Source: Octopus sinensis
Taxonomy: Eukaryota
Length of the DNA: 64,000 nt
Direction: 5' to 3'
Assembly: GCF_006345805.1 (NCBI RefSeq)
Contig: NC_042999.1
Span: 97,154,001-97,218,000, forward strand
Position 1 is the first letter of the stretch. Every line of letters starts with the position of its first letter. Made by a program: the position numbers and the translations under genes. Of the stretch, positions 3,602 to 33,337 are shown one piece after another. Under the pieces are notes generated by a model. That model saw nothing but the letters and a program-made list of their open reading frames with translations, was not told where the DNA came from and made no database searches.

Positions 3602-4717
3602 TGTTTCTTTATTAGCCACACAGGGCTGCACACAGATAGAACAAATTACAAGGTAGAGCTTTTCTTTTGAAGGTTTAAAAAAACAAAAAAAAAAAAAAAA
3701 AGGAAGGGGGAGTTTCGATCAAAAGGGATCGTAAAAGGAGAGAAAGAGGACAAAAAAAGGGGGGTTAAAAAAAGGGGGAGAGGAAGAAAAAAAAGAGAAA
3801 AAAGAGAAAAAAAAAAAGAAAAAAAAAAATTGATCAATAGGGATCGTTATCACAGAAATGTCAATATGAAGTGTAAAGGGGAGGACAGGTGAGGTTTACC
3901 CGTGGAAAGAAAAGCCTACGGAAAAGACCACGGTAACCTCGGTCAATGAAGTCACATTTTATATTTTTTTTTTTTTTTTGCAAATAAGCAACTCTCTGTT
4001 TTCGATTTCTGGGTTCATAGGACTATGCTCAAGGTGGCTTCGTCATTCATACGTGCCATTCTTGCTACATTCACCCATCGTTTTTTAAAACATTCGCTAG
4101 ACAAAACTTGCCTCTCTACTCTCACTTTCCTTTTCAAGTGGTACTTGAAGAAGTTGATGAGAGATTGACCAGAGAGGAAAGTGTTTGTCTCCAATCCTTT
4201 CAGACGCGTCCACCAGATACATTCTTTCGCCATAGCCACAAGGATGATGAAAATAGCTCTTCCTTCCCGTTTGAAGGAGGGAGGCGTGACAATATTGACG
4301 ATAGACTCAGCTGATAAACCGACTCTTCCCACACGTGACAGCAGTTGTTCGACATAAGCCCACAGGTCGGAAATTGTTGGACACTGAACGAGTGCGTGCA
4401 GAACGGTTTCGTCGCTCTGACCGCATCTCGGGCAGGTCGGCCCCGTGTTTCTCGAGCCGTGTCTGTAGAGCTTATCCCGAACGGGTAGCGCTTCTCGGTA
4501 GCACTGCCAGGCCAGGGATCTCTGGAAGTTGTCCATGGGCCCTGGCCCGAAAGTCGTCCCGAACAGGCGGGTCAGGTACTCCTCGTCGACGTCCAGGTTC
4601 GCCCCGAGCTCGTCGTCGTACCTCCCCTCCACTAAACCCCTATAGAATGCTTTGGTTGTGTTGAAGTCACTTAAGGTCGACCCAGGACGGCAGAATTGCT
4701 TGAGAGCAACGCGACAC
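3601..4717 (-). mobile_element. 5'-truncated Tx1/L1-clade LINE (ORF2 C-terminal zf-RVT zinc finger plus 3' UTR) inside a (GATA)n tract
   Basis: ORF 4015-4632 has LAWQCYREALPV...CPRCGQSDETVLHALVQC (CCHC), and the frame stays open to ~4716. GC-rich relative to flanks. The 3' UTR ends AATAAAGAAACAT directly before (ATCT)n; (GATA)n on both sides. Confidence 0.85.
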
Positions 4718-9111: not shown

Positions 9112-9465
<354 letters not shown>

Positions 9466-9973: not shown

Positions 9974-10452
9974 TAGTTTTATTTTTATAGCGTGCTTTCA
10001 CTTCACTACCGAGCGCAGCTCTGTGTGCCTTGGGTATGTGCTGTGATTTGTTGTGATGCTCTGATGGTTATTGTATGGAAAGTGTTCTGCGTAGGATGTG
10101 TGCAGTGCCTAGTAGTGCAATTTTCTGTATGTTATATGTGTTTGTAAGTCCTGGTGTTTTTGTTATGTTTTGTTATGTATTGTCTGAATATTTTTTTATC
10201 ATGCCTAATGCACCTACTATGATAGGAATTGTTTCTGTTTTCAGGTTCCACATTCTAGTTACCTCTATTTCCAGGTCTTTGTATTTTGAGAGTTTCTCCA
10301 TTTCTTTTAGAGACACGTTGTCATCTGCCGGTATTGATACATCAATTAGAAAGCATTTTTTTTCTTCATGATCTCTGACAACTATATCTGGTCTGTTGGC
10401 CTTAATTTCTCTATCTGTGTGTATCGGCATATCCCAGAGTATGGTTGCTTTC
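9971..10452 (-). mobile_element. 5'-truncated Dong/R4-clade LINE (restriction-like endonuclease C-terminus) inside a (TAA)n tract
   Basis: KATILWDMPIHTDREIKANRPDIVV...LIDVSIP...EKLSKYKDL...PIIVGALG, then after a small duplication IQKIALLGTAHILRRTL*. (TTA)n at 9939-9970 and 10453-10517. Confidence 0.85.
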
Positions 10453-10512
<60 letters not shown>

Positions 10513-10556
10513 TATTAACTGTACATCTGGTAATATTAATACTGTTTTTCTTTCAG

Positions 10557-12291
10557 CCTAGAATTTAATTGGTCGATAACCTGCTCCGACTGCTCTCGTA
10601 ACCAAACCAAGAAAACAGATAGCAAGGAAAGTGGTTCGGCCGACCCCACCGGCAAACAGTCCTCTACACAACGTGATAAACAGCAATATTCTCACTTGAA
10701 AGAATTTTTCACCTTCACAGACGAATCAGAAGACTCTCCGCCTTTATTTCATTTGCCGGAGTCAGAAATTCCATCCCAATCTCAAGTGAAAACCCAACGA
10801 GGAAATCTTATGAAATCTAAACAAAGACGTATCAATAATGACGTGAATCTTACCTCTAGTGCTGCATCCCGTCTTCTGTCGCCACACTTTAATTCCACAC
10901 TGAAGCAATTCAGAATCAGAAAGACCTTTGTGGTGAAAAACAAGAAGTCTAATACAGGAAATGGGATGGGACACAAGAAATTGTCAAAAACAGTGAAACT
11001 TAGCAGAGCGGGTAGTAGAAGTTTACCAATACTAACAGATAACAAAGGCGGGGTCTTAAACTCAAAAAGAAATCATCTTAAAGTTATTCGGAAAAAAATA
11101 TCACGACTAGAAAATGATAACTTATCAACTGGAATGGTTAGTTCTAAAAACCGCATAGTTGACCATATAAATACTGCTCCTCCTTTGACTTTTAATAAAA
11201 CTTCAGAAAATGTAATGACAACTCCACTGCCTCCAAGTCATTCTAGTGTCTTGAGAAATCCAAATAATACTGGCAAACATACTGAGCTTCGTTTATCAAA
11301 GAAGGGAATTGACGAGAGGTTTATAGAGACAGTGGTGGCTGCTGTGGAAGACATTTCAAGCGATCAGGTGGATAAAGTAAAATCTTTACGACCTCTAGAG
11401 CATTCAAAAGAACGAAATTTAGAGGCGGGTTCAATTCCAGATAAATTAGAATCGATTGCAAATTTAGTTAAAATTACTCAGAAAGCCAATGAAGATTACG
11501 TTAAATCAGAAAGTGAAAATGCTCAAAATTCTATCGAAGAAGAGTATCTTAGGTACTCTTCCATCCGTTCGGAAAGTGAAAGCAGCACAGCATTTCCAAG
11601 AGACAGTTTGACTCCAGATAACATGAAGAGCATATCATGGACCATCGTGCCTACTCATAAAACTGATTCTAGATCAGAAACTGCTGACTCTAGATCAGAA
11701 AGTAACCCCTTTGAAACGATACCTAGAGATGAATCAAATCCAGATTTGGAATTTAAAAGTCCAAAATTAAATAGTAAAAAAGCCAGTCAAAAGCTAACAT
11801 CAACTATTGCCAAAGAATCGAGTTATTACCAAAATTCTGTAAATGGAAGTTTAAGCCGAATTAAAGTGACAAACAAATTTTCTATGCGGAATTCACATAT
11901 ACGGCGAACGTTTGAGTCACAGGGTGCTACCCAAAATTATCTTTCGAGGGAGTCTCAGACAGCAACAACAACAACTAATACCGTAACAGCAGCAACAACA
12001 ACAGAGTCAGCAATAAGAACTCCTTCAAGAGCAGTTACACCACCAATAATTACAACAACAGCAGGGACAACAAAAACAACACAGCGGTATTTTGACGTTC
12101 GAATACCATCAGAAAAGAAAGACAAAAGTCCAACCAAAACGCAAGTGAAAGAGGGGACTGGATCAACTGTGTCAGCACACATGGTGGTTACATCAAGGAT
12201 CGGGAAAGGTGTTAAACCTTCGGCTGCTGATCAACTAATCATACCGATAACCCAACCAAAGTCGCAATCGGAAGTACAGCCGTCCTCGAAC

Positions 12292-12379
<88 letters not shown>

Positions 12380-14391
12380 TATTAGGGAATAATCCAATGG
12401 TCAATGAAGTCCAGCAGGAAGAAAGCATTCCAACAAGAGTTAGCCTGGAAAAGAAAACTTCCCCAGATTGGTGGAGGCGGACATACGATGTAAGGACTTC
12501 ACATGGCACGTTAAGTTCCATTAGAAGATTTTCAGTTCTGCGTGACGTGACATCAAAAGCAAGTCTTGCTAGTGAAAGCATAACTAGAGATAAAACATCC
12601 ACTACAACAAATTTTCCTTCTGTGGAAGACAAACAAGTCATCTTGGAGCCGAAACCTAAAAGAATCAGGATGAGGAATTCTACAAAAGGGAAAAGCATCA
12701 ACAGTGTAGCAGCCAGGAAACAAGGAAGACCAGTTATTAATTCAAAGGCAAGACAACAAACAAGCGCTTTGAACGATTCTGAACAACTACTTGATATAAT
12801 TCACAGGGAACATTCTCGAACGTTTCCTTCAGAAAACTCCCAAAACAGCGATACGGTTCAAACTACAACTGGTAGTTCTAAAATAAACAGCATGAAAGAT
12901 TTTTTGACAAGTCTTGTTAAAGTAAAAGGTTCTAAAAATCAAATAGCAAGTAAGACCAAATTGCAAACTAATAATCGAACAAATCAGTTTATCGAACCTG
13001 AAGATTTTCTTATATCGACCACAAATGCATCTGTTGAACGCAAAGAAACCCAACTGCTTCATTTGACTGATGAAGGTAGTGGGGTTAATGAAAATCTTGA
13101 CTCTGTCTTACGCAATGAACTGGGATTTGAAATGAATGTTAATGTCAAAAATACAACTAGCAAAGCAACTCTGCCAGCAGTATCTACAACAGGGAATATC
13201 GTAGAAAAAAACATTGATGGTTTACCGGAACGTATGTTGTCTGTAAAACCTACGTTGACATCTCAAACTGATGTTAACGATTTAGTCTTATCACAACAGT
13301 CGCTTGAAGCTGATTCTGTTACTCTTCCAAATATATCCGTTCCGGCTTTCCATTTACAACGGAACGTTACTGAAATGGTTAACACAGTTACCGAGCAGTT
13401 GAACATTTCTAGCGTCATCCAAGATGTATCTTTTGAAATGGAAAACCCAATAGACTATAAAAGTTCTACTGAACAAACCAGATCCAATGACGATATACAT
13501 ATTAGACCAATTACAACGAATACAGACAGTCAGGCAGTTCCTAAGAATGGGACTGGAACTACTGGTCCTAATCAATCATTTAAGACCACAACAAATATCA
13601 AGAAGAAAGTTTCTAAACTCAAAACTTCAGTTTCGCTTTCGAATTCATTTGAAATTCCTTCGACAGGTTTTGAATACAACTTGATAAATTCAACCGAATA
13701 TTTGGAGAAGGTCACTCCCGTTTACAATTCCAGTAAATTAGATCCATATTATTCACAGGCCCCACCAAATAATAAATCAAGTGTAAACCCACCTTTTTCT
13801 CGGCAACACCTTTTAACATTAAAAAATCAAACAAAATCGCAACAAAATAGAGGAAAAATCAATCAGATATCACTGACTTTTAATATCACAAATAATTTTT
13901 CCTCGATCGGAGTCACTCCTCAATCAAATATCACATACGAGCCAGCAGTCAGTGAAGTAGCAAATAATACTTCTATAAAGCATCCCCAACTAAAACCCCA
14001 GATGACATCGGACAAAAACAATGTCCACAATGTTCTAACACCCATTAAAGCTACAACTTTAAGCTTCATAACTGGAATTGATACAAATACCCAAAAAACT
14101 AAAATCTCGAATCCGGTATTATCCACGTTACTAACGTCTACAACTATCACAAGAAAGAAAGACAAAATCCATTTATCGCCATCTGAAGAGTTGCAACCTG
14201 AAAATTCGGCAACGAATAATGAGGAGGTTTTCACATACAGCCAACTATATCCATCCACTCTTCACATACCTAAACCTACAACACAGACCGAGTTTCGAAC
14301 ACTAAAAATATCTACACATACAAGAACAATTGAACATACCGGAAACAAAGAATATTTTCATGGAACTTCAACGTTTTCAACTCCCAGAAGA
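10557..14391 (+). CDS. Giant exon encoding a Ser/Thr-rich mucin-like ectodomain (frame stays open to the stop at 14730 if unspliced)
   Basis: Acceptor ttttctttcAG at 10555-10556. Frame is open from 10558 (LEFNWSITCSDC...) into the 1344-aa ORF 10696-14730. High S/T/N/K content, many N-x-S/T sequons, 29-Ser run. Confidence 0.85.
12292..12378 (+). repeat. Coding (AGT)29 encoding poly-Ser
   Basis: 29 perfect AGT units in frame within the giant exon. Confidence 0.95.
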
Positions 14392-14660
14392 GTAAGTTCT
14401 GATAATTCTGATACCATTCCTGCTATTACGTCTGAGTCTAAAACTGTCCCATCAAATGTTAATGAAGCTCGTTCTACTCTAAATCCCAAAGTGAACACCA
14501 AATTCCACGAAAGATTCCCTTTTACTCCTTCCAGTGTTCGTCAAGTGTTTACTACAATCTCTCCAAAGTCAACTACATCCAGTAGTTTCTTGAAAATAAC
14601 GCTGCCAAAGTGGATAATAATCTCGAGAAATTTCGAAGATTTTCTTCGACTTTCAAATAG

Positions 14661-15049
14661 AATGACACCAAAACAAAAATCAAATATAAACTTGTCATCT
14701 TCATGTCCTCTACATCTACAAAAGCAGTAACTGTTCCCAAATACAGATTTACCCCACGATGGTCAACTGTATTCTTAAAAGAACAAAAACTGTATGAACC
14801 AACGACTCTAATAAGACCGGGCAAAAGAAGAAGTAGTAGTAGTACCCAGCTAAAAGGAAAACGACAAGAAAGCCTTAATAAACCCCGACCTATCGGATCT
14901 CCTATTCGACAAGTTCAAAATATGCAAAAAGAAATTATACTCAGTCCAAGGGAAATTTTTATAAAATACTGGCCAGCAATCACAGGCTCGACTTTTGGAG
15001 CCCTATTTCTTCTGGCAGCCATCTTAACATCAGTTGTCTGCAAAAGAAG
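14661..15049 (+). CDS. Juxtamembrane and transmembrane exon of the mucin-like gene
   Basis: Frame 3 is open from 14661, right after a TAG that doubles as an acceptor. Encodes ...KYWPAITGSTFGALFLLAAILTSVVCKR (hydrophobic helix plus basic stop-transfer). Donor AG|GTAATT at 15050, phase 2. Confidence 0.8.
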
Positions 15050-15391
15050 GTAATTGTTAATTGTTCGTTCTCTTCTTTAATTTTGATATTTTAAATGACT
15101 AACATTTGTGGGTATCATGTTGATGATGCATGAATTTTATTATTTCATCAAACAACTTCATCACTAAAAGATTACATTGTGAATACCAGCAAAACAATGA
15201 TTTTATTAGTCGAGACTGTTTCAGTAGTTGTTTTTGCTATTTATTCCGTGACACCTTTTTCTTTTTTCGGGAATAGTATACTTCCGACTACATTATCCAA
15301 TATGCCCTTTTTAAATTTGTTAGCGTACAATTTCGAGAGCGATGCCGCTTTATTTCTGGTATATTGTCCTAGTATATTGGGCAAGTTGCTG

Positions 15392-15392
<1 letters not shown>

Positions 15393-15440
<48 letters not shown>

Positions 15441-15455
15441 TACACATATGTATAA

Positions 15456-15492
<37 letters not shown>

Positions 15493-15614
15493 AAGCGAGA
15501 GAAAGAGGGGGAGAGGGGGAGAGGGGGAGATAGTGAGGGAGCGATGTATATATATATATATATATATATACATGCATGTATATATATATATATCTTTATA
15601 TATATATGCATATG

Positions 15615-15647
<33 letters not shown>

Positions 15648-15787
15648 ATGTATATATATATATACATATATATATACATGTATATATATACATGTATGTA
15701 TGTATATATGTATATCTATATATATATATTGTGTGTGTGTGTGTGTGTTGTGTGTGTGTGGATGTATGTATGTACGTATATATATAT

Positions 15788-15870
<83 letters not shown>

Positions 15871-15890
15871 TACATACACCACACACACAA
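15393..15890. repeat. Compound (TA)n/(GA)n/(TG)n microsatellite block
   Basis: Direct reading. Confidence 0.9.
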
Positions 15891-17879: not shown

Positions 17880-18117
17880 CTCATATATTTTCTCTTATAT
17901 GCATATATACACGCATATATACATGTATATGTATATACATATATATATATGTATATACAAATATATATACATATACACATATACACACACACATATACAC
18001 ATATATATATACACACACATATACACATATATATATACACACATATATACATACATACATACATACATATATATACATACATACATATATACATACATAC
18101 ATACATACATACATACA

Positions 18118-18200
<83 letters not shown>

Positions 18201-18218
18201 TATATATATATACACACA
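17880..18218. repeat. Compound (TA)n/(TACA)n microsatellite block
   Basis: Direct reading. Confidence 0.9.
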
Positions 18219-30010: not shown

Positions 30011-30513
30011 CAAAAACACAATAGAGGACAGTAAAACATTCAGACAGATAGACGATACAAAGGCGGACAGGGGAAACAACAATTAGAAGGACGGGTAAAA
30101 AGACAGGTCATTCGTGGCCTTCTTTCATCAGTTAAGTTTACCAGAAGTCCTTACTGTTTCGGGCAGTTACACTTGAGAAAGTTCGATCTGGTTACCCCCA
30201 AAAAAGTCTAAGCTAAGAGCATTAGAATTTTTTGTAAGAAAGCTAACGAATGTATCGGCAACAAAGACAAAAAACAGAGAACATGTTACGCAATTACAAA
30301 TACAAACAAGAAAATAACAACAGGTGTCTTTTGACTGAGAACGAATCAAATTGGCGTGTATGAAGTGAACATAGGAGATGGACACAAGAGGTGTTGGCAG
30401 TCGGCAGTCAAGCCAAGAAAGAAAGATCATGGCTGGCAGGACACCAGTCACGTGGATGGAGGAGAGAGGTGTAGGTGGCAGCGGGATTGAAGGAGATAAA
30501 CGAGGGGGAAGGT
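30008..30513 (-). mobile_element. Probable Penelope-like terminal fragment capping the 3' end of the CR1-like LINE
   Basis: Abrupt switch from RT peptide (...QLWSP) to unrelated sequence at ~30514. Contains a decayed hammerhead half (CTGATGAAAG-AAGGCCA/cgaa/TGACCT, no GAAA). Ends at (TA)n. Confidence 0.4.
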
Positions 30514-32780
30514 GGGGCGACCATAGCTGGGAGCAGTAGTCGAGACAGCTGAGGACAAATGTTCTCCAGAGGACCATCATGGTTTCTTTCTCTCTGGTTC
30601 TTAAGGTTCTCAGGATCCAGCCAGCCAGCTGTCTGCACTTTATCGCCATATTGGTAATGTGCACTTGGAAAGAGATGTCATCACTCATGTCGATACCCAG
30701 GTCCGCACTGATTTAGGTTTGGAGATTGTAATATCCTGTGGGCCAGTGTACTCTGTAAGTTTTAAGTTCAGTTTTGGGCGCTGGTAGCGCAGGGCTTGGA
30801 ATTTTCCAGCATTAAACTGCATATTATTGTCCTCAGCCCATCTGTAAATTGATTCCAACTCCTGCTGCAGGTGTGCAACATCGCTAGGAATTTGTATTTT
30901 CTGCGAGACTTCCGTATCGTCTGCGTAGCTAGCAAGAGTGACTATCTGGGCAGCTGAGGGTATATCTGAGAGGGCTACTATGAAAAGCAGTGGTCCCTGG
31001 GAACATCACTCACTATTTGTGTTGACTTTGATGTGGCTCCATTGACCACCACTGCCTGACTTCTATCTTTCAGAAAGTCATGTAACCACTCTCCAAGTTT
31101 TCCAGCTATGCCAAGATCACGCAGTTTGTGGCATATCACATGATCCACTTTATCAAAAGCATTTGAGTTGTTGAATAATTGCCTCAACACCCAGTCATAG
31201 TGCCGTAGGAACTGGGTCAGGCAGCTCCTACCTGGTCGAAAACCATACTGGGTATCACTCAGCAAGTCGTTTTCTTCAAAGAATGCGGTTAGTTTCCCTC
31301 TGACTATTCGTTCCATGACTTTGCTGATGTGAGAAGTCAGAGAGATAGACCTATATTTTTTGGTGTCTGCTCCACTTCCTCCTTTATGGATTGGGCATAT
31401 CATTCCCTCCTTCAGTTTGCTTGGCAACCTGCCCGTTGCAAGAAAACTCTGGAAGAGAATCTGTAGTGGTTTCGCCAGGGCACACTTATACGATTTGAAG
31501 AGGATTGCTGGGAAACCATCAGGGCCAGCAGTTGAGTTTGCGTCCACCTCATCTATGGCTAGTAGTATATCTTCTTCACCAATGTTGATGTAATCTATCG
31601 TAGCTGCCTCGCTGGTTATAGGTGAAGCGACAAAGAAATCCACTTGTTCGCTCACTTGTCGGTGTTCCAACGGGATGGTAAAGGCACTTTTGAACTGGTC
31701 ATTCAGTACCTCACTGATCCTGGTTGGGTTATCTGTGAGGGAGCCATCCTTTTGGGAGACGGGTCCTATCTTAGAGCGTACTGAAGCTGTTTCTTTGGCA
31801 TAATGAAAGAAGGACTTTGGGTTTGACTTAATGTTTTTTTATAAACCAGGCTTCTTTGTTTGCTCCATCCTTCACATAGGATTGTTGCAGGCTTTTTTCA
31901 ATCTCCATCAGTGTTGTTTTTAGGCAGGACCTTTCACTACTTTTGGGATGCTGGTTGAAGCGATATGCAACCTTCGTCTGTCGTCTCATGAGCATCTTCT
32001 TCTCCCTTGGAATCTTGTTCCTTTTTATGTTGGCCTTGTGCTCTGGGACATATTTCTGGCATATGGTTTGCATAACAGACATGAAATATTCGAGTTTCAT
32101 GTCAATGTCTGGTGTGAAGAGACATTTCGTCCAGTCCTATCTGAGGATCTCTTTTTGGATCGATTTTCAGTCTGCTTTATGGAAGTTCGGATTGGAGAGA
32201 TTTTGGGTGCTTCCTTTAGGCTGTATGCCTCTGGATACTTTTGGTCCATACATAGACTACTCTGTTATGATGTGATCTGAAACTAATGTCAGCGTCACTT
32301 TCACATTATGAACGATGTCCATATTCTTTGTGAAGCAGAGATCCAGAATGTTATTCGCCCTAGTTGGTCTGAGCACAACTTGCTCCATGAATAGTGCATT
32401 GATGAGGTTGAGCAGGAACTCCACCTGTATTTGTTTGCAATGAGTCATTCTTGAGAGCATGAGGTCTTCGAAGGATTTGGCATTGGGGAAGTTGAAATCA
32501 CCCATAAGAAACACGCTCACGTGATGTTCCAGTTTCATGAGGATTTCTTTTATTCTTGTGAGGCAATCTTCAAACTTGCCTGTGTGGTTTGGAGCATCCA
32601 GTGAGCAATATGTATTGCATATGACTATATTGTGTTGTCTTATGTATACAACTAGCGTCACATACTGAATTTGAGTGTGACAGTAGGACATGGAGTATGA
32701 GATCCTCACGGATGTATACAGCAACTCCAACGTGGCTCCTCTCCCTTCTGTCTTTTCGCAGTAATATATATGTATATATG
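30514..32780 (-). mobile_element. Degenerate CR1-like LINE ORF2 (APE endonuclease plus reverse transcriptase)
   Basis: APE: RKDR..SHVGVAVYIRED, MGDFNFP, PTRANNILDLCFT, SDH. RT: AGPDGFP, PIHKGG, YRSISLTSHISKVMERI, QYGFRPGRSC, AFDKVDH, LASYADDT (~30912-30935), LDYCSQLWSP. Several frameshifts and stops. Confidence 0.9.
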
Positions 32781-33337
32781 CATGTGAAACAGCCAAAGAA
32801 AGAAGCAAGTCTGACTGCCAATACAACAAAAAGGATAAAAAGCGACAGCACACACGAATGTGTAAATTCCACTTGAAAGGTGTCTGGTGGCATAGAGAGG
32901 GGGGTGCATACTGCCATTTTGTAGACCAAAGACCCTGCCACACCAACACAAAACAGGGTGGAAACCAATTGCCAAAAGGAAAGGACCACGTACCACCTGC
33001 CTCAAAACAGAAATACGATGTATTATGCACTACAAACCAGTCCTATCAACATGTTATAGAAAGGGAAGCTGCTAGACAACAATTTTTTTTTTGTATGGCA
33101 CAGAAGATTGTACAGCAACTGACCTGGCTACATCAATCTCACAGATGGGACTATCCCCAATACACAAGACCACCACAGCAAATGGACCCAAGGTGGACAC
33201 CACTAGCAACAACACAGACATCACATCGGTGCTCTTACTGAACATTAGAGGGCTGTTAACACTTAGTAACAGGACAAAAATTGCTTTCCTGAGGGACCTT
33301 GTTGCATGCAATCAAGCCTTATGCACAGCAGTAACAA
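32781..33337 (+). mobile_element. Inverted 5' segment of the same LINE (ORF1 end plus APE N-terminus)
   Basis: Plus-strand Cys/His-rich RMCKFHLKG..., then TSVLLLNIRGLLTLSNRTKIAFLRDL...ALCTAVT, the APE N-terminal motif missing from the minus segment. Confidence 0.75.

What the first reader, a model, noticed from the sequence alone, without database searches (positions are those of the whole stretch)
14392..14660. Exitron-like 269-nt segment that could switch the mucin between membrane-anchored and secreted forms
The 1344-aa ORF (frame 1) stops at 14730 without a TM; the TM is in frame 3. A perfect donor AGA|GTAAGT lies at 14392 in phase 0, and a pyrimidine-rich acceptor ttttcttcgactttcaaatAG ends at 14660, exactly at the last frame-3 stop. 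Removing 269 nt fuses ...TPRR|NDTKTK... in frame through TM and tail. Retention gives a TM-less protein, and the segment is itself stop-free and S/T-rich like the stalk. A one-base assembly or real indel between 14661 and 14727 is the main alternative explanation.
Basis: partly seen in the sequence, partly recalled or inferred. Interest (0 to 1): 0.75.

Follow-up and report, generated by a model that had tools for sequence, protein, structure and literature searches.

The report
Probable one-base frameshift, not an exitron
A large octopus gene for a sugar-coated surface protein changes reading frame just before its membrane anchor; this is most likely a single missing base (a sequencing error or a recent mutation), and the intron-like 269-base segment is probably ordinary coding sequence, though only RNA or read data can settle it.

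Summary
The window is Octopus sinensis CM016861.1:97,154,001-97,218,000, a PacBio-era assembly. A 4.5 kb exon (10557-15049) is open in frame 1 to TAA 14728-30. It is open in frame 3 from 14661 through a clear membrane-spanning segment. GTAAGT at 14392 is the only GTRAGT in the exon and sits in phase 0. Removing 14392-14660 (269 nt) joins the two frames. A pair this good arises by chance in about 1.7% of codon shuffles.

The segment is nevertheless coding-like in frame 1: it has no stops, the same codon bias as the rest of the exon, and the same GC. Frame 1 stays coding-like for 14 codons beyond the proposed acceptor. The best-fitting frame switch is near 14704, which matches simulated one-base deletions. 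A much stronger acceptor-like site at 14534 competes out of frame. The only annotated product is an unspliced 777-aa protein ending at 14730, and no homologue exists in the databases searched.

My estimate:
- One-base indel, whether assembly error or real: about 0.6.
- Functional exitron: about 0.15.

Iso-Seq or RNA-seq reads, genomic reads, or the O. vulgaris locus would decide. None can be reached with these tools.

The parts
10064..10143 (+). Candidate first coding exon: ATG plus a hydrophobic, signal-peptide-like start (MVIVWKVFCVGCVQCLVVQFSVCYMC), ending in phase 2 at the donor TTT|GTAAGT (G at 10144)
   Evidence: The phase fits the acceptor at 10556, and the join reads ...YMC-F-LEFNW. 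This is inferred only; it is not annotated.
10144..10556 (+). Putative intron 1 (413 nt), T-rich, containing a (TTA)22 microsatellite, with acceptor ctgtttttctttcAG
   Evidence: T 48%, AT skew -0.36, stops in all frames.
10557..15049 (+). Giant coding exon of a Ser/Thr/Asn/Lys-rich, mucin-like protein. Frame 1 runs to 14727 and frame 3 from 14661.
   Evidence: There is no Pfam domain and no homologue.
12292..12378 (+). (AGT)29 microsatellite encoding poly-Ser. The annotated 777-aa CDS starts at the first ATG after it (12397).
12397..14730 (+). The only CDS on record at this locus (P0001, 777 aa, single exon). It retains the 269-nt segment and ends at the frame-1 TAA.
14389..14397 (+). Donor-like site AGA|GTAAGT, phase 0, formed by codons GTA (Val) and AGT (Ser)
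   Evidence: It is the only GTRAGT in the exon. About 0.56 in-phase GTAAGT are expected from Val-Ser dipeptides.
14392..14660 (+). The 269-nt segment: stop-free in frame 1, with exon-like codon bias and GC, but the most T-rich window of the exon
14514..14534 (+). Strongest acceptor-like site in the exon (ttcccttttactccttccAG), 143 nt after the donor. Using it would enter frame 3 and hit a stop after 16 codons.
   Evidence: score 9.4, against 1.8 for the acceptor at 14660.
14640..14660 (+). Proposed acceptor ttttcttcgactttcaaatAG. Its AG is part of the last frame-3 stop, TAG. Another AG lies 22 nt upstream at 14637-38.
14661..14727 (+). The 67-nt zone where frames 1 and 3 are both open. Any single-base indel must lie here. 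It contains A4 and A5 runs at 14670-79.
14692..14716 (+). Most likely position of the frame switch (maximum likelihood at 14704, roughly +/-12 nt). The joined reading ...NLSSS(x)SSTSTKAV... is one smooth Ser/Thr run.
14728..14730 (+). Frame-1 stop TAA, the end of the annotated protein
14877..14882 (+). AATAAA, 147 nt after the frame-1 stop and inside the frame-3 coding part. About 1.9 per kb are expected by composition.
14979..15050 (+). Predicted membrane-spanning segment ITGSTFGALFLLAAILTSVVC followed by KRR, in frame 3
15047..15055 (+). AAG|GTAATT donor-like site (G at 15050) overlapping the frame-3 stop TAA 15051-53. The protein either ends ...CKRR or continues in an unseen exon.

Best explanation
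The region 10557-15049 is one continuous coding exon of a taxonomically restricted, Ser/Thr-rich (mucin-like) type I membrane protein of Octopus sinensis. In the assembled sequence its reading frame is broken by a single missing base inside 14661-14727, most probably around 14692-14716. This is either a consensus error of the PacBio long-read assembly or a real, very recent (possibly heterozygous) one-base deletion. The 269-nt segment is ordinary ectodomain coding sequence. On this reading the GTAAGT...AG pair that happens to restore the frame is a coincidence produced by a Val-Ser dipeptide (GTA AGT) and pyrimidine-rich Ser/Thr/Pro/Phe codons.

Shown: the geometry, the coding character of the segment, the position of the codon-bias switch, and the unspliced annotation.

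Inferred: that a base is missing, and whether that is an artefact or real.
For: 1. The segment scores 0.49 bit per codon in frame 1, against an exon mean of 0.48 +/- 0.13. It has 0 stops in 89 codons (about 0.002 by chance) and 36.8% GC against 37.5% in the flanks.

2. Frame 1 remains coding-like for 14 codons beyond the proposed acceptor: +6.67 bits, P = 0.002-0.012 if this were unselected read-through.

3. The maximum-likelihood frame switch is at 14704, 7.19 bits better than a switch at 14661. A gain that large occurs in 38-39% of simulated one-base deletions, whose mean gain is 6.8-7.0 bits. It occurs in only 0.6-14% of splice-only nulls.

4. The joined reading ...NLSSS(x)SSTSTK... is a smooth Ser/Thr run.

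5. A 67-nt overlap of two open frames is what a single indel gives in sequence where about 7-10% of off-frame codons are stops.

6. The source is GCA_006345805.1, assembled from PacBio reads plus Hi-C. Long-read assemblies are known to carry frameshifting indels (abstract of PMC12007338), and collapsed alleles can give apparent frameshifts (title and abstract of PMC8445201).

7. The only product on record is the unspliced 777-aa protein. Only the longest product per gene is kept, and a spliced isoform from the same ATG would be 795 aa, so no such isoform is annotated. That 795-aa sequence is not in the collection.

8. The best acceptor-like site in the exon, at 14534, is non-productive. This shows that this composition generates splice-like motifs by chance.
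Against: - A frame-restoring GT...AG pair this good arises in only about 1.7% of codon shuffles.
- The donor is the only GTRAGT in 4.5 kb.
- The candidate intron 1 of the same gene uses the same kind of donor, a weak exon side followed by GTAAGT.
- The segment is the most T-rich and pyrimidine-rich 269-nt window of the exon, and the shift begins at about 14380. It continues to about 14770, however, and the local protein sequence is richer in Phe and Ile.
- The predicted switch near 14704 is not in a long homopolymer, which is where polished long-read errors concentrate. The A4 and A5 runs lie 25-34 nt upstream.
- I saw no reads, transcripts or orthologues.
Confidence: 0.6

Rival explanations
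1. This is a frame-shifting exitron. On this reading 14392-14660 is alternatively spliced. The spliced mRNA encodes the membrane-anchored form (...TPRR|NDTKTK...TM-KRR). The retained mRNA encodes a TM-less, secreted form ending ...HLQKQ at 14730.
For: - The sites are canonical, with a perfect intron-side donor in phase 0, the only GTRAGT in the exon.
- The chance probability of the pair is about 0.017.
- The segment is stop-free and coding-like, as the exitron definition requires (PMC4484396).
- Exons that contain exitrons tend to be long (PMC4484396).
- The segment has the most intron-like T content of the exon.
- An AATAAA at 14877 could end a retained transcript.
- The annotated protein does retain the segment.
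Against: - No spliced product is annotated or present in the protein collection.
- The codon-bias switch lies at about 14704, not at the acceptor.
- A far stronger acceptor-like site at 14534 would compete and give a premature stop.
- An AG at 14637-38 lies 22 nt upstream of the acceptor, and I could find no clear branch-point match by eye.
- GC is not lower than in the flanks.
- If the donor at 15050 is used, the retained mRNA carries its stop 319 nt upstream of an exon junction, which would make it a likely target of nonsense-mediated decay (inference).
- It needs a contrived history: a segment coding in frame 1 and a TM part coding in frame 3, both maintained.
Confidence: 0.15
2. The frameshift is real and fixed. 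On this reading the gene now makes only the truncated, TM-less protein (the annotated 777-aa model or a longer version), and the frame-3 TM reading frame is a recent relic on its way to decay.
For: - The annotated model ends at 14730.
- The gene has no detectable homologue, even though O. bimaculoides and Argonauta proteins are in the index. That fits a fast-evolving, dispensable gene.
- The predicted switch point is not in a long homopolymer.
Against: - The frame-3 ORF is still intact for 130 codons (about 1.4e-4 by chance, given a stop frequency of about 0.066), with a clean TM plus KRR. Any such mutation must therefore be very young.
- With these tools it cannot be told apart from an assembly error. 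It is counted within the 0.6 of the best explanation, as its 'real deletion' branch; the figure here is my estimate for that branch alone.
Confidence: 0.2
3. 14392-14660 is an ordinary constitutive intron, and its open frame 1 is accidental.
For: The GT...AG sites and the 269-nt length are compatible with a short intron. Putative intron 1 is 413 nt.
Against: - 89 stop-free codons have a chance probability of about 0.002, and the codon bias equals that of the exon.
- Composition is unlike the two putative introns of the gene: T 32% against 42-48%, and GC 36.8% against 29-32%.
- The annotation treats it as CDS.
Confidence: 0.03
4. The ribosome or polymerase changes frame in 14661-14727, by programmed -1 frameshifting or transcriptional slippage.
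For: A -1 shift in the overlap zone would join the two frames. A4 and A5 runs are present.
Against: There is no X XXY YYZ slippery heptamer in frame 1 in the zone. The A runs are far shorter than those known to cause slippage (read; established knowledge of such sites).
Confidence: 0.01

Closest known systems
Exitrons (Marquez et al. 2015, Genome Res, PMC4484396; Drosophila Or-gene exitrons, PMC10990081)
   Same: It is an internal part of an annotated protein-coding exon with GT...AG ends and no in-frame stop, inside an unusually long exon. Its length is not a multiple of three, so removing it changes the C-terminus.
   Different: Splicing has not been observed. GC is not lower than in the flanks. 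Here the spliced frame, not the retained one, carries the long downstream ORF; this is the reverse of the usual case and is what a simple indel predicts. A stronger internal acceptor competes.
Frameshifting indels in long-read genome assemblies, and apparent frameshifts from collapsed alleles (PMC12007338, PMC8445201)
   Same: Two long ORFs in neighbouring frames overlap by a few dozen bases in a PacBio-era assembly. The annotated protein is truncated at the first stop. Codon bias switches inside the overlap.
   Different: The predicted site is not a long homopolymer. No reads were available to show the missing base.
Secreted versus membrane switches by use of an internal donor (immunoglobulin mu-s/mu-m; MUC1/SEC read-through isoform); from general knowledge, not tested here
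   Same: The idea is the same: reading past an internal 5' splice site gives a short secreted tail, and splicing from it adds the membrane anchor.
   Different: In those systems the membrane exons lie beyond the secreted-form poly(A) site, and the read-through sequence is not a long coding-like stretch. No sequence relationship exists, and nothing here shows regulation.
Membrane-tethered mucins
   Same: It has a long Ser/Thr-rich ectodomain (27% Ser plus Thr, 29 N-x-S/T sequons), a single C-terminal TM, basic residues after it, and a candidate signal peptide.
   Different: There are no tandem PTS repeats apart from poly-Ser, no SEA, EGF or other Pfam domain, and no homologue. Sequon density equals the shuffle expectation. 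It is 'mucin-like' by composition only.

Membership tests
Exitron | Lies wholly inside an annotated protein-coding exon | tested here: met
   The annotated single-exon CDS P0001 (window 12397-14730) spans 14392-14660.
Exitron | Canonical core splice signals (5' site, 3' site, branch point) | tested here: inconclusive
   GTAAGT and a pyrimidine-rich tract ending in TAG are present. With my crude matrix both rank 4th in the exon and score close to the gene's putative real sites: donor 2.45 against 3.09, acceptor 1.76 against 3.18. I found no clear branch-point match, and there is an AG 22 nt upstream.
Exitron | No in-frame stop codon; coding character | tested here: met
   0 stops in 89 codons and 0.49 bit per codon, the same as the exon mean.
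Exitron | Is actually spliced out in a fraction of transcripts | not testable with these tools
   No RNA data can be reached. The annotation and the protein collection hold only the retained form.
Exitron | Base composition shifted towards introns relative to the flanking exon (lower GC in the 2015 data sets) | tested here: inconclusive
   GC is 36.8% against 37.5%, so there is no drop. T content is the highest of all 269-nt exon windows, at 32% against 24.5 +/- 3.2%. The T-rich zone runs on about 100 nt past the acceptor.
Single-base indel (assembly error or recent mutation) | Two long ORFs in adjacent frames with a short doubly-open overlap | tested here: met
   Frame 1 is open to 14727 and frame 3 from 14661, an overlap of 67 nt.
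Single-base indel (assembly error or recent mutation) | Coding signal changes frame inside the overlap, not at a splice site | tested here: met
   The maximum-likelihood switch is at 14704 and is 7.19 bits better than a switch at 14661. That is typical of simulated deletions and uncommon under splice-only nulls. The statistic rests on only 22 codons.
Single-base indel (assembly error or recent mutation) | Independent reads or sister-species sequence show one more base | not testable with these tools
   No eukaryotic read or genome collection is searchable here. Exact look-ups of two 'corrected' proteins found nothing.
Membrane-tethered mucin | Tandem Pro/Thr/Ser-rich repeats and a juxtamembrane SEA or similar domain | tested here: not met
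   The only tandem repeats in the exon are (AGT)29 and one 2.4-copy 21-mer. There is no Pfam hit. Ser, Thr and Pro together make up 32.5%.

The most novel reading that the evidence does not exclude
The frame offset is real, and the 269-nt coding segment is a bona fide frame-shifting exitron. On this reading, splicing it out makes a membrane-anchored form of a lineage-restricted octopus surface glycoprotein, and retaining it makes a secreted form. It would be a membrane/secreted switch built from an internal donor inside a 4.5 kb exon, in a cephalopod.
Probability: 0.15. Interest if true: 0.5.

Novelty: not a real feature. Interest (0 to 1): 0.2.

Why it matters
If the exitron were real, it would be a tidy example in a mollusc of intra-exonic splicing deciding whether a protein is anchored or secreted. 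Exitrons are well described in plants, humans and Drosophila, and my one literature search found no cephalopod example.

If it is a frameshift, as I think more likely, the practical points are smaller:
- The RefSeq model of this gene (777 aa, no signal peptide, no TM) is probably a fragment of a membrane protein of about 1,500 aa.
- The locus is a useful warning. In Ser/Thr-rich exons, convincing splice-like motifs that happen to repair a frame can arise by chance.

Tried and rejected
- **Homologue searches.** Three word-index searches were run. The C-terminal 317 aa in an 'indel-corrected' reading and the whole frame-1 ORF found nothing, not even the window's own annotated protein. A control with the LINE reverse-transcriptase ORF did return O. 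sinensis, O. bimaculoides and Argonauta hians proteins, so cephalopod proteomes are indexed.
- **Exhaustive HMMER search.** Against 1.84 billion representatives it found only the self-match P0001 and a weak hit to an unrelated repeat protein.
- **Exact look-ups.** The spliced 795-aa form, two corrected 885-aa forms, the long ATG and TTG forms, and the 116-aa frame-3 ORF were all absent.
- **Other database scans.** Pfam found no domains. The window holds no paralogue. Rfam and tRNA scans found nothing.
- **Literature.** I searched the supplementary files of PMC9712504 for the CDS coordinates and found none. The O. sinensis genome paper is not held. A search for reported frameshift problems in this assembly returned nothing useful.
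- **Rejected ideas.** Programmed -1 frameshifting has no slippery heptamer. A-to-I editing cannot change the frame. A constitutive intron is ruled out by the segment's coding character.

Full report
**Source of the window.** The exhaustive protein search returned a 777-aa protein, P0001, that is 100% identical to the last 777 residues of the frame-1 ORF. That protein is encoded on GCA_006345805.1, chromosome CM016861.1. The fetched locus is base-for-base identical to window 2397-24730. The window is therefore CM016861.1:97,154,001-97,218,000. This assembly is the Octopus sinensis genome of Li et al. 2020, built from PacBio reads and Hi-C (cited in bioRxiv 10.1101/2023.05.16.540928). The window looks like a cephalopod genome: 36% GC, many microsatellites, and LINE fragments.

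**Checking the observation.**
- The frame-1 ORF 10696-14730 is 1344 aa.
- The donor AGA|GTAAGT has its G at 14392, in phase 0.
- The tract ttttcttcgactttcaaatAG ends at 14660, and its AG belongs to TAG 14658-60, the last frame-3 stop.
- Removing the 269 nt gives ...STPRR|NDTKTK... and reads on to ...VVCKRR at 15050.
- Frame 3 holds the only credible TM segment, with a Kyte-Doolittle 19-mer mean of 1.99 against at most 0.94 in frame 1.
- The two frames are both open only in 14661-14727.

**The gene around it.** Frame 1 is open from 10540, directly after a good acceptor (ctgtttttctttcAG, 10556). The first in-frame ATG is 84 codons further on, so the exon is probably internal. A candidate first exon lies 413 nt upstream. 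It has an ATG at 10064, a hydrophobic signal-peptide-like start, and a donor TTT|GTAAGT at 10144 in the phase that fits 10557. This is inference only. At the 3' end, AAG|GTAATT at 15050 overlaps the frame-3 stop, so the protein either ends in CKRR or continues in an exon I could not find.

The protein is 15.5% Ser, 11.5% Thr, 8% Lys and 8% Asn. It has no Pfam domain, no tandem repeats beyond a poly-Ser microsatellite, and no homologue. It is mucin-like by composition only.

**Is the splice-site pair more than chance?**
- GTAAGT at 14392 is the only GTRAGT in the 4.5 kb exon. About 1.1 GTAAGT are expected from base composition, and about 0.56 in phase from Val-Ser dipeptides.
- With a crude position-weight matrix taken from general metazoan frequencies, the donor ranks 4th of 215 GT and the acceptor 4th of 320 AG. 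Both score a little below the gene's putative real sites.
- In 3000 codon shuffles a frame-restoring pair at least this good, 40-1000 nt apart, appeared in 1.7%.

Allowing for the other rescue routes a reader might have accepted, I treat it as roughly 2-5%.

**What the segment looks like.**
- In frame 1 it has 0 stops in 89 codons (about 0.002 by chance). Its codon-bias score of 0.49 bit per codon is indistinguishable from the exon mean of 0.48 +/- 0.13. The other two frames have 7 and 9 stops.
- GC equals that of the flanks. It is not an ordinary intron.
- It is, however, the most T-rich and pyrimidine-rich 269-nt window in the exon: T 32% against 24.5 +/- 3.2%, and AT skew -0.01 against +0.22. 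The shift begins near 14380.
- That shift runs on to about 14770, and the local protein is richer in Phe and Ile. It may simply reflect a more hydrophobic juxtamembrane region.

**Where the frame really changes.** I trained a codon model on 10558-14391.
- Frame 1 stays coding-like for 14 codons past the proposed acceptor (MTPKQKSNINLSSS, +6.67 bits) and then turns off-frame-like.
- Frame 3 is neutral over those codons and becomes coding-like from 14703 (MSSTSTKAV...).
- The maximum-likelihood switch is at 14704, 7.19 bits better than a switch at 14661.
- Under splice-only nulls, where frame 1 is unselected read-through, a gain this large occurs in 1% of cases with ectodomain codons, 14% with downstream-region codons, and 0.6% of real off-frame open stretches in the exon.
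- The 14-codon frame-1 score has P = 0.002-0.012 under those nulls.
- In simulated one-base deletions, both synthetic and in the real exon with a leave-out model, the mean gain is 6.8-7.0 bits. In these, 38-39% reach the observed value, and the estimate falls within 12 nt of the true site in 71% of cases.
- A simpler position-specific base model points the same way, but weakly.
- Joined near 14704, the protein reads ...NLSSS(x)SSTSTKAVTVPKYRF..., a smooth Ser/Thr run.

This rests on 22 codons, so it is modest evidence, about 3-10 to 1 for an indel over a plain splice.

**Further points against active splicing of 14392-14660.**
- The best acceptor-like site in the whole exon (ttcccttttactccttccAG, 14534; score 9.4 against 1.8) lies inside the segment, 143 nt from the donor. 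Using it would enter frame 3 and stop after 16 codons.
- A functional switch would be expected to have lost such a competitor.
- Its presence also shows that Ser/Thr/Pro/Phe codons generate acceptor-like tracts here by chance.
- An AG lies 22 nt upstream of the proposed acceptor, and I could see no clear branch-point match.

**Outside evidence.**
- Within 10 kb either side, the only gene on record is the single-exon 777-aa CDS at 12397-14730. It retains the segment and stops in frame 1.
- Only the longest product per gene is recorded. A spliced isoform from the same ATG would be 795 aa, so none is annotated, and that exact sequence is absent from the 15-billion-protein collection.
- The CDS begins at the first ATG after the (AGT)29 microsatellite. 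That would fit a transcript-based model broken at the repeat, but this is my inference.
- No homologue was found in an exhaustive search or in word-index searches, although O. sinensis, O. bimaculoides and Argonauta hians proteins are indexed.
- No reads, transcripts or sister-species genome sequence could be reached.

**Weighing.**
- The indel reading explains the coding-like segment, the codon switch inside the overlap, the typical 67-nt overlap and the annotation. It needs one coincidence, the splice-like pair, at 2-5%.
- The exitron reading explains the pair, the coding-like segment and the T-richness. It must accept the codon switch at about 14704, a strong competing acceptor and no annotated spliced form. 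It also needs an awkward history in which frame 1 of the segment and frame 3 of the TM part are both maintained.
- Apparent frameshifts are common in long-read assemblies (PMC12007338, PMC8445201). Frame-shifting exitrons whose spliced form carries the conserved downstream ORF are rare; in the 2015 definition the retained form is the full-length one (PMC4484396).

My estimates:

| Reading | Probability |
|---|---|
| One-base indel, of which roughly two thirds assembly error and one third real deletion | about 0.6 |
| Functional exitron | about 0.15 |
| Constitutive intron | about 0.03 |
| Recoding (frameshifting or slippage) | about 0.01 |
| Unresolved | remainder |

**Comparison with known systems.** The segment meets the structural parts of the exitron definition: it lies inside an annotated coding exon, has GT...AG ends and has no stop. 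It fails or leaves open the rest: splicing is not observed, and there is no GC drop. The proposed function would work like the immunoglobulin mu secreted/membrane choice or MUC1/SEC, but that is an analogy from general knowledge, not a tested relationship.

**Verdict.** It is most likely a frameshift in the assembled sequence and not a regulatory element. Interest is low unless RNA data show the 14391^14661 junction.

Noticed in passing
window 10064-10556: Candidate unannotated first exon with a signal-peptide-like start (ATG 10064, donor TTT|GTAAGT at 10144), followed by a 413-nt T-rich intron containing (TTA)22. The phase fits the acceptor at 10556. Together with a repaired frame, this would give a membrane protein of about 1,500 aa where RefSeq has 777 aa.
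   Followed up: partly
window 12292-12378: A perfect (AGT)29 microsatellite lies inside the ORF and encodes a 31-residue poly-Ser run. The annotated CDS starts at the first ATG after it, which suggests the gene model was broken at the repeat.
   Followed up: partly
window 14514-14534: The strongest acceptor-like motif of the whole exon (ttcccttttactccttccAG) lies 143 nt downstream of the only GTAAGT. This 143-nt pseudo-intron is also 2 mod 3, but it runs into a frame-3 stop after 16 codons.
   Followed up: yes
window 30167-33030 (- strand) and 4015-4632 (- strand): Fragments of LINE-type retroelements: an endonuclease (PF14529), a reverse transcriptase (PF00078) broken into several ORFs, and a separate zf-RVT piece (PF13966). 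The closest proteins are from Argonauta hians and Octopus sinensis, at 57-62% identity.
   Followed up: partly
The search for homologous proteins: The word-index search did not return P0001, even though that protein represents its own 90% cluster in the same collection and is 100% identical to part of both queries. Negative results from that tool for this window's own gene should therefore be read with care.
   Followed up: partly
P0002: The only non-self hit is a 3048-aa protein made of long near-identical repeats. It matches 88 residues of the ORF at 33% identity (E = 6e-7, 8 stretches). This is probably a compositional match; I did not determine its source.
   Followed up: no
window 15395-15876, 17915-18212, 9112-9463 and elsewhere: Dense dinucleotide and tetranucleotide microsatellites, (TA)n, (AG)n and (ATAG)n, flank the gene. 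They create many long spurious ORFs on both strands.
   Followed up: no
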